Shown here one piece after another: positions 4,858 through 13,569 of a stretch of 64,000 nt of DNA. Numbering within the stretch: position 1 is the first letter of the stretch; every line of letters begins with the position of its first letter. The position numbers were made by a program, and so were the translations under genes. The notes under the pieces are model-generated. The model was not told the origin of the DNA, did not search any database, and saw only the letters and a program-made list of their open reading frames with translations. Source of the stretch: Bugula neritina (taxonomy: Eukaryota; Animalia; Bryozoa); contig OZ037773.1 of assembly GCA_964035545.1 (NCBI GenBank), forward strand, positions 5,299,751-5,363,750, in the 5' to 3' direction.

Positions 4858-7800
4858 ATGGCGTGTCTGCGGTTCATTGCTTTAACAATTGTTGTTCTAA
4901 TTTGGGATTTTCACTTATTTGTCAATTGCAGCAGTTTACAGGGTATGTATTTAACTTTTAATACAGATTCAGTAAGTTGGTAAAGTAGTGCTTTGTTAGG
5001 GCTTTTAATCAAGAAGCAAGAACGGTTAATTCATATCATGAACATTTTTTACTGAAATATTTTATTGCCACATTGCGTCAGTCATAAATAAAACAACTGA
5101 AACTTTTATCACATTTTCAACTTTTCTCACCCGTATAACGTTTAATCGATTCGAGTAGCGGGTAACATTTTCAACTATTATGTAAAAAGACACCTTGCTT
5201 GACTCCTGAATAAAACATTTGATTGATCTGCAGAAACTCAAAGCTGTAAAGTTATTTCAACAACAAACCAAGTCAACTTCCTGCCCGACTCTGAGCTGAT
5301 TGGTCGGAAAGAGTTTGCCAGAACGCAAGTTGAGTGTCTTCAGAGATGTCAAGAGAAGCCGCAGACGTGCTCTGCTGTAATCTATGATTCAGATGGTAAG
5401 AAACAGAATATTGTTTTTGATATCTTATTTTATATTATGTTTTATTATATTGTATAATATATTTATATAGCATTTCTATATATTCATAATGCCTGTAATA
5501 TAATACAATAGGTTGCTTTATTCACAGCAGAGCTGTTTTATTTAATATCACAATTTTCAATGAACCCTTAATGTTTTCACAATAAAACTCTGTGAAGTCT
5601 CAAACAACTGCTTTGAAATTTCTCCATAATTTTATCCGTAATGTAGCGCCTCATGACGCGCTTTTACATGTTAGTGACGTGCGAGAATACACGCTAGTGA
5701 CCTGCCACACACAGTGCGTGTGTTGCGAGTGAAAAAATTTATTGGCCAATGATGTTAGCGGTAAACTTTACTGCTCGCCTACAGACGTTTGTTTTTAAAA
5801 TTACGTCATCGGCAAAGTGACTTAGATAGAAGTAGAAATGCAAATTATATGAAACTGTTTTAATTCAGCTCGCTAAAAGCTAAAACGTGAATTGAAATAA
5901 AAAAAATGTGCTCGCTAAATGATAATATACCAATTAGATCAAACACGCACAAGCTTGCCGCTGGGCTCGCTCAGCATGCTAAGCGCATGAAAATCCTACT
6001 CATAACGTCCAAGTTTTGGGCTAAACGTGATTTCTCGCATGCCACGCTCATGTAAAACGCGTCGTGTGGCCCTACACTAACACTAAACTTTAAGGAGAGT
6101 ATTAACAATTATCTGGTGACATAGTTGCTAACTCAAAACTTGGATGTAACAGCTGATTAGTATCGAAGCAGTTTATACAATATAAATTTTTGAATCTTAT
6201 AATACATTCGGTTATTATGCTGTTTACATCAACCTCGTGATTCACAATTTCACGAGTAATTTAATTTTTGTAATTGTCTCATTTCAGGCATATGCAACGA
6301 GTTCAACGGCAATAATGTGGATATTAAAGATACTCTTAATGGTCAGAATGCAGATAGACGTGAAGTGTTTCTACCTATGCTATCCAAAGGCAATGTAAGT
6401 TTGTCATAATATTACAGATGTGCCTGTGTGCATGCGTGTGTGTTTCATAAATATATAATGAAAAGTTAGAAGATTGTCACAATAAAAGCAAATGCTATTT
6501 AATTGTATACTGAACAATTTTTTTAACAGCATAATATTATTTTAGTTGGTTGATAAGTTATTTAACAGAACCTTGATACATTATTAAATTCATGTGCACC
6601 ACGTATGATTAACAAAATTTTTTTTAGGGTATAGTCACAGCATACAAGCAATAAATTAAAAAATACCTTCATAGACATAATATAGAAAATCAAAGCCATA
6701 AAAAAATTATGAGTTGTTTCGAGTGTTTCACAAATTATTGCAAAATATTGGGTATCCTGTAGTAAGATTTTTAGAACAACATTAAGTAATAGCTATGCCA
6801 ATTAGTCTAATGTAACTTCACATGCTATCTATAGCAAGAGAATTGTTAGAGCGAACAACGTTAATTGATTCATTTTCTAGAAATATAATGATAAGAAGAT
6901 TTAGCCTAGGTTATGGTAAAAAACTTTGTTTCTATTCTTTCAAAATCTTAAAGTTCTGAATTAAACAAGATGTTAGAATATTAGGAACATACTACTGTTT
7001 GAATTATACCAATAAGTTTTCCTATTGAAAACCTTCCTAATGGCCTCAAAAAGGTGTAGTATAAAGTCCAGCAAAGGGGCATTTTATTATGAAAGAATAA
7101 CTTCTTTTTAATTTAACATGCCATTCCTAAATATTATGGAAAAATCACCACAAATTTTTCTAACAAAAATAGTTAAACCATAGCATGGCTTACGCTTGCC
7201 TTTTTCATCAGTCAAGAGAATAATTGCTGAGTTAAATGCTTATGCTTTAAATATCTTGTAGATAATATTACAAGGTTTTAAAAAAAATTTTTTTTAACCA
7301 ATTAAGACCTAACAACTTCTAATAATAAAATGTTATAATGTACCTACACGTTTTACTCTATATAACATGGTGTACCATGTCATATTGTAGAGTAAAAAGT
7401 ATACACTGTATGTATTGTGGTATGATTGTATGTTTAATAAAATATAAACTTTTTGTGTATTTTAAAAATACAGAGAATGACCTATCCCAAAGTTCAAGGT
7501 TCATCTGCCCTGAGAGTAATTGCACACATGTCTGTGAGAGCCCATCAAAGTGCAAATGGCTGCCACCATTGGTATCTGACCTTTGATGATGTCACCTGCT
7601 CCAACCCTGGCACCATTGAGATGATGGACCACCGAGCCTTCGCTGACAACTACTATCGGAGTATTGATCGTGAGTGGCACATTTTGGTTTAAGTTTTACA
7701 ATTACTCAACATGCAGCTTCTGCTTTTGTTGTGCCAGAAAAGTCGATGCCTGTTTTGTTTGCCGTGTGTCCTGATTAGATTGTAAATGTCAATAAGAAAA

Positions 7801-10800: not shown

Positions 10801-13569
10801 TTTCAGGTTTATATGGGTAGATGGAAATGAATGCTCAACAAAGATTGATGGTATTATATACCATGGTACAGTGAACACAGCTAGATTTGCTAACCACACT
10901 CGAACATTGACAAGTATGTGATGTGCTTAAACAAAACTCTGTCAAATGATTTTATTAAAAGTTTTATTAAATATCCCTGTAAAGCAAGGTTTTTTAATTG
11001 TTGAAAGTTAGTTGCAATAAGGTTTGAGTGATTTAGCTTTATATGTAAATCTGTTATTGTAATTGATTTATATAATCATTACCTAAAAGCTTTGCAAAGT
11101 CAGTGTGTTTGTAAAACGTTGATAGAATATATAAAAAATATTGAAGATTTTTATATTCTATCTCCCAGCACAATACAATAATATTTACAAATATGTCACT
11201 GCTTGCAATATATAAATATAAATGCCGGGGCTAATTTTTTCATAACACCACAAAAACGTGTGGCAAAACATTTAACTAAGGCTTCATTGTTTCTGGTATT
11301 TACAGTAGAAGGAGTTTGTGATGATGAGTTAGCTACTGGTCCACACAATATAGAAGTTTGGGTTGGCGAATGTGACGACCCTTCTGATCAGCCAACAAAC
11401 TTTGTGTCTGGAGGCTACAACTCTCCGTCTCGTCTTCACATTGAAGAAATAAGAAAGGAACTTAGGCTAGATGCAGGTGAGCATAACTCCCAAATAATAA
11501 CATGAAAGCAACATCTAACATAATATGTTTTATAAAGGAAGTTTCACCAACATGTTACAGCGTACGGGCCAAGGGCAACTGTGTACAGGAGTCACACTGG
11601 ATATTTAACAAGTTACTACCAGTTTGCTCTGAATGACGATATGGATCAGGGAGTTTTAGTGACCTTGACCTATGAGAAACAGTTCTCCAGTACAGCTTTA
11701 CGGCTCACGGCTAGTGGAGCACACTTCATGCAGCTGATTCTCACAAACAGATGCTCAATGTGGTAAATAGAATATAACCAACGTGATAACATAACAGAAT
11801 GCAATATAATATAAGGTAAAATATTTGGCCATTTGTAGATGTGCACAGCTGATTGTAGTTTTTTTTAAAAGTTTAATCAAAAGAGGTACATACTTTAGTT
11901 TTTACTACTTTCACAAACAATACTTTCAACACAAACTCTATCATTAGAAAATATAGTATAGAAGAACATTAAAAAATGCATATTATTTGAATTTTTTATA
12001 AGCAGAATTTATCTGAGCAGTATCACACTAAATTGAGTGAATTGAAACATTCAGAACTTTGAAATGATTATTTCACAATCACATTGAACAGCACTGCTAC
12101 AAGGCAACTGAATGTTATTTAGGTATTTTCAAATAGATGGTAATGACTGCGCCTCGCCCACACTGGTCAAAGGAATGAACTACTTTCCAACTGCTAACAG
12201 CTTGCACTATCCCATGCAAGGTAAGGCAATTGCTTCAAAGCAAATCTTTTGATTATTGCTTTAATGGCTTATAAATGCCTTGTATTATATATTATTATAG
12301 TAAGTTTAGGTTTTGTTATTGCATAAACTTAAATATTTTTGTGGTACAATTAAAATTTAACTTTTAATTGAGAGTGCTTCTGGGATTGTATTATAAGACA
12401 TTTTTTAGTAGTTTTCGAATTATTTTAAAAGCTTTTGTAAGCAAGAATTTATAATCTACACTAAAGTATTGTCTTTAACAAAGAAACACTCAACTCCTAA
12501 ATAATATTGTGAAAGTGTGAATTTTTTATTATAACAATAAATGTCTTGCGTTGTTACATAATTATAAAGCCAAATTCTATTTATTATTAAAAAAATACCT
12601 CACTAAAAGTTAAACTTGATAAAAATGTGTTGGGGTAATCACAAACAACAGTTTTTGTTTTTACATTCTAAAGTAAATATTAAGTTCTACTTTTAGGGAA
12701 GTTAATAACTATCAAGTTATATTTGACTTTTCAAAATTTTGAGAAATGCACAATTTCACCATCTATTTCACCAGCTCTTAGTGCAATGTTTTTTGTGGCT
12801 GCTTTTGTTGCATTTTTTTAATATTAGTTTACCAAATATTAGGCTTGCTCATTAACTCATGCATAAACATACTTAATGCAATTTAAAAATTCCTTTTATT
12901 TGTTCCCTAATCATTGCTTCAATCGTTGAAAGCTGAATTTGCATGGACCGAGTTACCTTTTTATTTTCTCTCTCATTTCATTGAATACCAGATACAACTA
13001 TAAGTACAAATTATAATATTATCATAGTAAATTATGATGTTATTACAGTAAGTGTTACACTAAGTGTCATATTACAGCAAGTGTCATGGGTCATATGTCA
13101 TGTTGCAGCAAATGTCATGTGTCATTACGTATAGTAACTGTCATATGTGTCATGTTGCAGCAAGTGTCATGTTACAGCAAGTGTCATGTGTCATGTGTTA
13201 TTATAGTAATGTCATGTTACAGTGTGGTATAGCATTAAGTTCAATATTACAACAAGAGTCATGTGTCATATTGCAGTAAGTGTCATGTTACCGCAAGTGT
13301 CATATATTGCACCAAGTGCCATGTGTCATTTTATAACAGTAAGTGTCATGTTGCAGCAAGTGTCATGTGTTCTTACAGTAAGTGGAGTATGCAAGGAGAT
13401 AGCAAGCGGCACCAGGACTGTAACATACAACGTAGATGGCTGTACTGGATTTACAGGACCCGCAGATGCCTACACAGGATTTAAATCCTCATTTTATATT
13501 TTTATAGAAGAGTTGAGGCTAGATAATGTTCACCGCTGCTCTGGAAGCCCAACTGCTACTTGTAATTGA
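4858..13569 (+). CDS. Gene A: secreted signal peptide + PAN/Apple-like + 3x CTHRC1 C-terminal-like domain protein, 12 exons, ~564 aa
   Basis: Manually spliced exons 4858-4942, 5234-5395, 6288-6394, 7474-7669, 8255-8413, 9658-9767 (GC donor), 10096-10202, 10807-10913, 11306-11476, 11561-11762, 12123-12220, 13379-13569. Total 1695 nt, phases consistent, no internal stop. Signal peptide MACLRFIALTIVVLIWDFHLFVNCSS. PAN-like TQVECLQRCQEKPQTCSAVIYDSDGICNEF. Three repeats of Y-x-K...ALR...CxxW(Y/F)...C...G-x-C...G...C...(T/G)G(W/Y/F)...E(E), which match the CTHRC1 C-terminal pattern (FTKMRSNSALRV...[20 protein letters not shown]...VEGLC...WVGTC...TGWNSVSRIIIEEL). Confidence 0.85.
5642..6077. mobile_element. 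MITE family 2, related to family 1, in gene A intron 2
   Basis: Imperfect ~50 bp TIRs (TGTAGCGCCTCATGACGCGCTTTTACATG... / ...CATGTAAAACGCGTCGTGTGGCCCTACAC) sharing the GTGTGGCCCTA terminus with family 1. TAA on both flanks. Confidence 0.7.
10393..10769. repeat. (GT)n microsatellite, ~375 bp, gene A intron 7
   Basis: Perfect dinucleotide run ending ~37 nt before the acceptor at 10806. Confidence 0.98.
13040..13385 (+). repeat. Degenerate minisatellite (GTGTCATGTTRCAGYAA-like) abutting the last-exon acceptor of gene A
   Basis: Recurrent TGTCAT and ACAG/GCAG-(T/C)AAGTG units. The last unit is the functional acceptor TCTTACAG|TAAGTG. Confidence 0.8.

What the first reader, a model, noticed from the sequence alone, without database searches (positions are those of the whole stretch)
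7474..13569. Hypothesis: single-chain pseudo-trimer replaces collagen-driven trimerisation
Seen: exactly three divergent domains in both paralogues, each keeping four core Cys. Single extra Cys lie in linkers (NDLC, TISC, GGIC), and both proteins end in a conserved C-x7-C tail (CSGSPTATC; CTPGTPVTC). Inference: three heads on one chain could rebuild the three-fold head assembly of CTHRC1 without a triple helix, giving an asymmetric heterotrimer-like binding surface, possibly closed by tail/linker disulfides.
Basis: inference. Interest (0 to 1): 0.75.

Follow-up and report, generated by a model that had tools for sequence, protein, structure and literature searches.

The report
Single-chain triple CTHRC1-head secreted proteins
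Two neighbouring bryozoan genes each encode a secreted protein with three different CTHRC1-type head domains on one chain and no collagen stalk, and modelling of a brachiopod relative plus repeat counts across many homologues suggest the three heads fold into one C1q-like "trimer", a natural version of an arrangement known mainly from engineered proteins.

Summary
The window is a bugulid bryozoan chromosome. It carries two convergent multi-exon genes: P1 on the + strand (about 4858-13569) and P2 on the - strand (19676-27833 or further). Each encodes three diverged CTHRC1_C (PF25815) domains with four core Cys, an extra Cys before D1 and D2 only, and a two-Cys C-terminal tail. No collagen repeat is present.

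The pseudo-trimer idea is supported in silico, not proven.
- All 19 bryozoan genes examined have exactly three domains in the same order.
- Collagen-less relatives have 3 domains, or 9 arranged as (A-B-C)x3. Only collagen-bearing ones have 4.

The tail most simply forms its own small loop, and Cys parity suggests a D1-D2 disulfide.

The scan had already found this family at other loci of this genome.

The parts
4858..4942 (+). P1 exon 1: start codon and hydrophobic signal-peptide-like N-terminus (tentative)
   Evidence: ATG followed by a hydrophobic stretch, donor G|GTATGT, phase 1. No transcript evidence.
5234..5395 (+). P1 exon 2: PAN/apple-like module, first part (tentative)
   Evidence: PF00024 PAN_1 at 19.9 bits, just under the 21.4 cut-off. 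Similar to PAN exons of paralogues L005, L008, L018 and L001. Ends in phase 1 with G.
6288..6394 (+). P1 D1 first exon (GIC...; divergent N-terminal strand), tentative
   Evidence: Acceptor CAG|GC completes a Gly codon with the G left by exon 2; donor AAT|GTAAGT, phase 0. Only weak similarity to the P2 D1a exon (32% over 22 aa).
7474..7669 (+). P1 D1 middle exon (profile positions about 30-95)
   Evidence: PF25815 35.9 bits; local HMM 56.9 bits; splice sites read.
8255..8413 (+). P1 D1 C-terminal exon
   Evidence: PF25815 24.8 bits; local HMM 34.5 bits.
9658..9761 (+). P1 D2 first exon, with the linker Cys (NDLC)
   Evidence: The pre-D2 Cys is conserved in paralogues.
10096..10202 (+). P1 D2 second exon, ending in phase 2 inside the Trp codon of C-x-R-W
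   Evidence: Local HMM positions 30-64, 22.8 bits.
10807..10913 (+). P1 D2 third exon
   Evidence: Local HMM positions 65-94.
11306..11476 (+). P1 D2 C-terminal exon
   Evidence: PF25815 26.4 bits; local HMM 31.6 bits.
11561..11762 (+). P1 D3 first exon (no linker Cys)
   Evidence: PF25815 16.8 bits; local HMM positions 18-64, 27.1 bits.
12123..12220 (+). P1 D3 second exon
   Evidence: Local HMM positions 65-95.
13379..13569 (+). P1 D3 C-terminal exon with the C-x7-C tail and stop codon
   Evidence: PF25815 33.1 bits; local HMM 46.2 bits; tail read.
27311..27833 (-). P2 exon: end of the PAN-like module followed by a mucin-like Thr/Pro repeat (about 20 copies of a 7-residue unit)
   Evidence: Translation and splice sites; 21/42/84-bp tandem repeat. 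Ends in phase 0 and joins D1a.
26822..26911 (-). P2 D1 first exon with the pre-D1 Cys (GGIC)
   Evidence: matches the D1a exons of paralogues.
25887..26070 (-). P2 D1 middle exon
   Evidence: PF25815 34.5 bits; local HMM 60.4 bits.
24966..25109 (-). P2 D1 C-terminal exon
   Evidence: Local HMM 36.9 bits.
24433..24542 (-). P2 D2 first exon with the linker Cys (TISC)
23886..23989 (-). P2 D2 second exon
   Evidence: Local HMM positions 30-64, 23.1 bits.
23050..23162 (-). P2 D2 third exon
   Evidence: Splice sites and translation; same intron phases as P1.
21833..22003 (-). P2 D2 C-terminal exon
   Evidence: Local HMM 17.0 bits.
21197..21416 (-). P2 D3 first exon (no linker Cys)
   Evidence: PF25815 16.1 bits; local HMM 25.2 bits.
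20559..20656 (-). P2 D3 second exon
   Evidence: Local HMM 14.9 bits.
19676..19878 (-). P2 D3 C-terminal exon with the C-x7-C tail and stop codon
   Evidence: Local HMM 39.5 bits.
31931..32023 (-). Possible upstream PAN exon of P2 (tentative)
   Evidence: tblastn with PAN exons of paralogues L005 and L008, E 5e-4. The join to the rest of P2 was not established.

Best explanation
P1 and P2 belong to a lophophorate (bryozoan plus brachiopod) family of secreted proteins. The family architecture is signal peptide, PAN/apple module, a spacer, three non-identical CTHRC1_C jelly-roll domains (D1, D2, D3) and no collagen repeat. The spacer is a Cys-rich module in most members and a mucin-like Thr/Pro stalk in P2. 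Bryozoan members add a short two-Cys C-terminal tail. The most likely working form is a monomer whose three domains pack around a pseudo-three-fold axis, like the three chains of a C1q, adiponectin or TNF head. The covalent chain then does the job that the collagen helix does in canonical CTHRC1, and the head is permanently asymmetric (A-B-C). A disulfide between the equivalent extra Cys in the N-terminal arms of D1 and D2 probably staples the base, and the tail Cys pair forms its own small loop. Shown: gene structure, domain content, absence of collagen, and fixed domain number and order. Predicted on a homologue: the pseudo-trimer packing. Inferred: the disulfide pattern. Also inferred, from the large, fast-diverging tandem gene family and the PAN module, is a role as an extracellular recognition or adhesion protein, as in mollusc C1q-domain proteins.
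For: 1. Domains: PF25815 hits on exons. The whole genome holds at least 117 exon matches.
2. Fixed number and order: the local HMM on window, L001 and L002-L021 finds 19 genes. Each has D1 (unsplit middle exon), D2 and D3 (both split at profile position 64/65), and never 2 or 4 domains. The Bugula neritina model KAF6026444.1 looks two-domain only because the annotation skipped the D2 exons.
3. Same architecture (PAN plus three domains) in at least 5 Lingula genes and one transcript. Introns at profile positions about 30 and 95 are shared. D1, D2 and D3 form position-specific clades among the Lingula proteins.
5. Rule of three elsewhere: P0158 has nine domains as (A-B-C)x3, with 47-68% identity in register and about 40% out of register. 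Symbiodinium proteins and the metagenomic proteins P0004 and P0015 have three.
6. Cys parity: D1 and D2 are odd, D3 and the N-terminal region even, in four of five Lingula proteins. The window's P2 shows the same D1/D2/D3 pattern.
7. No G-x-y run anywhere in the window.
Against: The packing rests on one AlphaFold2 model of a homologue that matches the window's exons at only about 25-48% identity in local alignments. It was built from a 12-sequence alignment, and no PAE or coordinates were available to me. AlphaFold can pack tandem copies of an oligomerising domain within one chain even when the real contacts are between chains. My control on a four-domain collagen-bearing protein was uninformative (pLDDT 43). 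Folding D1, D2 and D3 as separate chains gave no verdict. Collagen-bearing relatives have four tandem domains, so tandem CTHRC1_C domains do not always come in threes. P0011 shows a 1+2 arrangement, which may be a chimeric gene model. No CTHRC1 head structure has been solved, so even the homotrimeric head of CTHRC1 is a model. The 5' exons of P1 and P2 are unverified. No expression data were available.
Confidence: 0.62

Rival explanations
1. Parallel homotrimer (or other oligomer): three chains associate, and each domain position forms its own homotrimeric layer (D1x3, D2x3, D3x3). This is probably what happens in the collagen-bearing four-domain proteins. The intrachain packing in the model would then be an AlphaFold artefact.
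For: Canonical CTHRC1 is a trimer (Pyagay 2005, as cited in PMC7058181). Collagen plus four tandem domains exist in Oscarella P0009 and in P0013. Those cannot be explained by one pseudo-trimer per chain. The control model gave no information on AlphaFold bias.
Against: The family has no collagen or coiled-coil trimerisation element. The domains diverged in a position-specific way and the number three is fixed. The nine-domain protein has period three, which a layer model does not predict. One Cys each in D1 and D2 but none in D3 fits a single intrachain link.
Confidence: 0.17
2. Beads on a string: three independent ligand-binding jelly-roll domains with flexible linkers and no defined mutual packing. 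The count of three is just inherited by whole-gene duplication.
For: Many of the 19 bryozoan genes are recent tandem copies, so their shared count is not independent evidence (nearly identical scores for L002-L013). In mollusc HcC1qDC6, each of the three gC1q domains was expressed separately and the paper does not discuss a trimer (PMC5519582).
Confidence: 0.13
3. One or both window copies are decaying paralogues (pseudogenes) of the expanded family, so their architecture says little about function.
For: P1 lacks a spliceable second PAN exon: a relic ORF near 5903-5960 is preceded by an in-frame stop and has no usable acceptor. P1 also lacks the Cys-rich module seen in paralogues, and its D1 first exon is divergent. 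The start of P2 was not found.
Against: All 21 domain exons of P1 and P2 are open, with canonical GT/AG sites and matching phases, and all 24 core Cys are kept despite only 25-43% identity between the copies. That argues for long-term purifying selection.
Confidence: 0.08

Closest known systems
[quoted passage not shown] 2020, PMC7058181)
   Same: The same C-terminal domain family (PF25815), with the same four core Cys. Both are secreted. The domain has been modelled as a C1q-like jelly roll that can form a trimer.
   Different: CTHRC1 has one domain per chain and a short G-x-y collagen stalk that drives homotrimerisation. The window proteins have three diverged domains per chain, no collagen, an N-terminal PAN/apple module and a two-Cys tail. 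Bryozoans were not sampled in that paper.
Lingula anatina 'uncharacterized proteins' XP_013395411/XP_013395410, XP_013399537, XP_013419728, XP_013417801, and Bugula neritina KAF6026444.1 'CTHRC1'
   Same: The same family and architecture: PAN, a Cys-rich module and three CTHRC1_C domains, with an extra Cys before D1 and D2 only and shared intron positions.
   Different: The Lingula proteins lack the C-terminal two-Cys tail. P2 has a mucin-like stalk in place of the Cys-rich module. None of these entries has been studied, and the B. neritina model omits D2.
Engineered single-chain trimers of C1q/TNF-fold heads (scC1q 5HKJ/5HZF, sc-adiponectin 4DOU, sc APRIL-BAFF-BAFF 4ZCH)
   Different: Those are man-made fusions of chains that are separate in nature, and sequence identity is only 7-8%. 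Here the fusion is natural, ancient and carries diverged protomers.
Mollusc multi-gC1q proteins, e.g. Hyriopsis cumingii HcC1qDC5/6 (signal peptide plus three tandem gC1q domains, no collagen; PMC5519582)
   Same: A collagen-less secreted protein with exactly three tandem C1q-fold heads and position-specific orthology between paralogues. It is reported as a microbe-binding immune protein.
   Different: The domains are true gC1q, not CTHRC1_C. There is no PAN module. A pseudo-trimer was not proposed or tested in that paper.

Membership tests
CTHRC1_C domain family (Pfam PF25815) | Match to the family profile above the curated cut-off (27 bits) | tested here: met
   Single exons score 35.9, 34.5 and 33.1 bits. 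Other exons score 16-26 bits because introns split each domain. Full-length homologues score 220-260 bits with three stretches.
CTHRC1_C domain family (Pfam PF25815) | Conserved core cysteines of the domain | tested here: met
   Four Cys at equivalent positions in all six domains.
Canonical CTHRC1 (sensu PMC7058181: collagen repeat plus C-terminal domain) | Short collagen G-x-y repeat N-terminal to the domain | tested here: not met
   No run of 4 or more G-x-y triplets in any frame of the 64-kb window. No Collagen Pfam hit in the PAN-type homologues.
Canonical CTHRC1 (sensu PMC7058181: collagen repeat plus C-terminal domain) | One C-terminal domain per chain | tested here: not met
   Three per gene in P1, P2 and 17 further bryozoan genes.
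C1q/TNF-like jelly-roll trimer (structural class) | Jelly-roll protomers packed around a three-fold axis | tested here: inconclusive
PAN/apple module (Pfam PF00024) | Profile match above the cut-off (21.4 bits) | tested here: inconclusive
gC1q-domain proteins (C1qDC) | Sequence match to the C1q domain profile | tested here: not met
   Pfam scans returned only CTHRC1_C for the head domains. The similarity to C1q is at fold level only.

The most novel reading that the evidence does not exclude
Collagen-less CTHRC1_C proteins obey a rule of three. In animals (bryozoans, brachiopods), in dinoflagellate-type eukaryotes (3 domains, or 9 as (A-B-C)x3) and in prokaryote-like contigs, the tandem domains come in triplets, because each triplet folds into a natural single-chain heterotrimeric C1q-like head. 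This would be a natural solution that protein engineers arrived at independently for TNF, C1q and adiponectin. The bryozoan family (dozens of genes) would then be a diversified set of asymmetric recognition heads.
Probability: 0.5. Interest if true: 0.68.

Novelty: new variant of a known kind. Interest (0 to 1): 0.55.

Why it matters
C1q/TNF-fold heads normally need three chains. Making defined heterotrimers is hard, both in nature and in the laboratory, which is why single-chain versions were engineered. A natural, old, gene-encoded single-chain trimer would show how evolution fixes subunit order and stoichiometry. It would explain why the three domains diverge in a position-specific way, and it would give a ready scaffold with three non-equivalent binding loops. 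It also bears on CTHRC1 itself: the oligomeric state and receptor-binding surface of this much-studied cancer and fibrosis protein are still only modelled, because no structure was found by sequence search. For bryozoan biology, a family of dozens of fast-diverging secreted genes with a PAN module is a candidate immune-recognition or adhesion repertoire.

Tried and rejected
1. Complex prediction with D1, D2 and D3 of P0003 as separate chains: verdict 'no answer', so it counts neither for nor against.
2. AlphaFold2 bias control on the collagen-bearing four-domain protein P0013 with a 2-sequence alignment: pLDDT 43, pTM 0.32, too poor to interpret.
3. Word-based homologue search with B. neritina P0002 found only itself. 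The search with the Lingula profile found 7 proteins, all but one already known from the representative search.
4. Exon-level BLAST of window exons against Lingula proteins could not show that bryozoan D1, D2 and D3 are orthologous to Lingula D1, D2 and D3. In the domain tree the two B. neritina domains sit on long unresolved branches. A single origin of the triplication therefore rests on architecture, introns and the Cys pattern, not on the tree.
5. Sequence search of the PDB found no solved CTHRC1_C structure.
6. ESM Atlas look-up of P0003 gave nothing usable.
About half of the C9 clusters seen were therefore not examined, nor were two possible single-domain loci at C9:7.59 Mb and 7.70 Mb. 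I cannot say whether this genome also has a canonical collagen-bearing CTHRC1.
All later scripts used coordinates only.
9. The spliced protein models of P1 and P2 were never joined or submitted to any tool. They were searched exon by exon, so no fold of the window's own proteins exists.
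Full report
WHAT THE WINDOW IS. The sequence is eukaryotic: about 32% G+C, long dinucleotide microsatellites and short exons with GT/AG introns. It is G000:C9:5299751-5363750 of a 216-Mb assembly. Earlier notes of this scan assign the assembly to a bugulid bryozoan. A Bugula neritina protein is the closest named relative of the genes studied here, at about 40-55% exon identity. It is not human DNA.

THE OBSERVATION. Stop-free frames and splice sites were read by eye. They give two convergent genes.
- P1 lies on the + strand and ends at 13569.
- P2 lies on the - strand and ends at 19676.
- Each gene has three sets of exons that match Pfam PF25815 (CTHRC1_C). Individual exons score up to 35.9 bits against a 27-bit cut-off.
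- A local full-domain HMM finds exactly three domain sets per gene.
- All six domains keep four Cys at equivalent positions.
- Intron positions and phases are the same in P1 and P2.
- D1 of P1 is most similar to D1 of P2 (43% in the last exon, against 19-34% for other pairings with either D1). The P1/P2 exon pairs are otherwise only 25-40% identical. By exon structure and order, the triplication predates an old gene duplication.
- No collagen-type G-x-y run exists anywhere in the window.
The given span, however, covers only part of P1 and none of P2.

- P1 probably begins at 4858 with a signal-peptide-like exon, followed by a PAN/apple-like exon at 5234-5395 (PF00024, 19.9 bits).
- P2 has an exon at 27833-27311 that ends a PAN-like module and then encodes about 20 copies of a Thr/Pro-rich heptad, a mucin-type stalk.
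- Other paralogues show the full N-terminal plan: PAN in two exons, a five-Cys module, then D1 preceded by a Cys. This matches the Lingula proteins.
- The 5' part of P1 is atypical. A relic of the second PAN exon cannot be spliced in frame, and there is no Cys-rich module.
These 5' models are tentative.

RELATIVES.
- A profile of the six C-terminal exons, searched against 1.84 billion representatives, gave 279 hits.
- Pfam counts and a local HMM show PAN plus three CTHRC1_C domains in at least five Lingula anatina genes and one transcript.
- There are three tandem domains in Symbiodinium proteins and in two metagenomic proteins. One of these, P0004, sits in a tightly packed, prokaryote-like contig.
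- P0158, a full-length intronless transcript with a signal peptide, has nine domains. Their identities (47-68% in register, about 40% out of register) show an (A-B-C)x3 super-repeat.
- Two collagen-bearing proteins have four domains: Oscarella P0009 and P0013.
- The apparent two-domain proteins are truncated or mis-modelled. For B. neritina KAF6026444.1, the D2 exons are present in the locus but skipped by the annotation, and a second three-domain gene lies next to it.
- In the window's own genome PF25815 matches at least 117 exons. I fetched 20 stretches. Every gene in them, 15 in all, has the same D1-D2-D3 exon signature. With the window and L001 that makes 19 genes.
- In Lingula, each domain has introns at profile positions about 30 and 95, positions also used in bryozoans.
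- Lingula D1, D2 and D3 form separate clades (quick tree).

STRUCTURE. I folded the Lingula homologue P0003 instead, with a 12-sequence alignment.
- The model has pLDDT 76.9 and pTM 0.71.
- Foldseek's best hit is the engineered single-chain C1q head, and single-chain adiponectin and APRIL-BAFF-BAFF trimers are also among its top hits.
In the model, then, the three domains form a C1q/TNF-like pseudo-trimer.

CYSTEINES.
- Four of the five Lingula proteins checked have an odd Cys count in both D1 and D2, an even count in D3 and an even count in the N-terminal region (P0156 has an even D2). The odd one sits at the same position in the N-terminal arm of D1 and D2 and is absent from D3.
- P2 and the bryozoan paralogues show the same pattern.
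- This suggests one D1-D2 disulfide near the base of the head. That is an inference, because I had no coordinates.
- The tail is conserved in nearly all bryozoan paralogues, usually as C-x6-C. It is absent from Lingula. Its two Cys most simply pair with each other.

LIMITS.
- The evidence is one model of one homologue, with no PAE.
- The AlphaFold bias control failed.
- The separate-chain complex test gave no verdict.
- No CTHRC1 head structure has been solved.
- Four-domain collagen-bearing relatives show that tandem CTHRC1_C domains can be organised otherwise.
- No expression data were available.

COMPARISON AND NOVELTY.
- The domain family and its C1q-like fold prediction are published (PMC7058181), but that survey did not sample bryozoans and I found no tandem-domain proteins described in the passages I read. 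I found no paper linking CTHRC1 to brachiopods or bryozoans.
- Three tandem true gC1q domains without collagen are known in mussels (PMC5519582), without any structural reading.
- Single-chain C1q/TNF trimers are known as engineered proteins.
- I therefore rate this a new variant of a known kind.
- Three earlier reports of this scan reached the same reading at other loci of this genome. I tested the claim independently here.

VERDICT.
- Observation: confirmed.
- Interpretation: partly supported. Pseudo-trimer packing is likely, at about 0.6. The proposed tail-to-linker closure and the 'replacement' of collagen are not supported.

Noticed in passing
window 27311-27700 (-): P2 carries a mucin-like stalk of about 20 Thr/Pro-rich heptads between the PAN-like module and D1. 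Other paralogues and Lingula have a five-Cys module at that place.
   Followed up: partly
window 5903-5960 (+): A relic of a second PAN exon in P1, similar to the second PAN exon of paralogues. It is preceded by an in-frame TGA and has no usable AG acceptor, so P1 appears to splice from 5395 directly to 6288.
   Followed up: partly
window 10392-10769, 19916-20557, 22437-23061, 45370-46876: Large microsatellites and minisatellites sit inside introns of the two genes: (TG)189 in P1 D2; (CA)n, (CATGTG)n and (CATATA)n in P2 D3; a 20-bp unit x31 in P2 D2. A 1.5-kb CA-rich array lies elsewhere. These arrays explain the GC-skew spikes in the composition profile.
   Followed up: no
window 59514-60206 (-) and 53939-54370 (+): Open frames that look retroelement-derived by eye: a gag-like protein with two CCHC zinc knuckles, and a possible reverse-transcriptase fragment. 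Neither was searched against any database.
   Followed up: no
L001:10001-18012 and L001:21891-26913 (Bugula neritina VXIV02002276.1): The public gene model KAF6026444.1 'CTHRC1' (321 aa) omits the D2 exons, which are present at 14466-15884. An unannotated second three-domain gene lies just downstream.
   Followed up: yes
L024:55-4242 (P0158, JGI 3300009028 / SRR1922582): An intronless transcript encoding a signal peptide and nine tandem CTHRC1_C domains arranged as (A-B-C)x3. In the domain tree it groups with the Symbiodinium-type proteins.
   Followed up: partly
L017:1410-1559 (G000:C6:5888410-5888559): This is the one paralogue examined whose D3 lacks the two-Cys tail.
   Followed up: no
G000:C9:7590490-7590729 and C9:7702216-7702925: The two loci that best match a canonical hemichordate CTHRC1. 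They may be single-domain genes.
   Followed up: no
P0011 (1400 aa, MetaClust): One CTHRC1_C domain, then LamG, fn2, three PAN and two pentaxin domains, then two more CTHRC1_C domains. Either a chimeric gene model or a true exception to the triplet arrangement.
   Followed up: no
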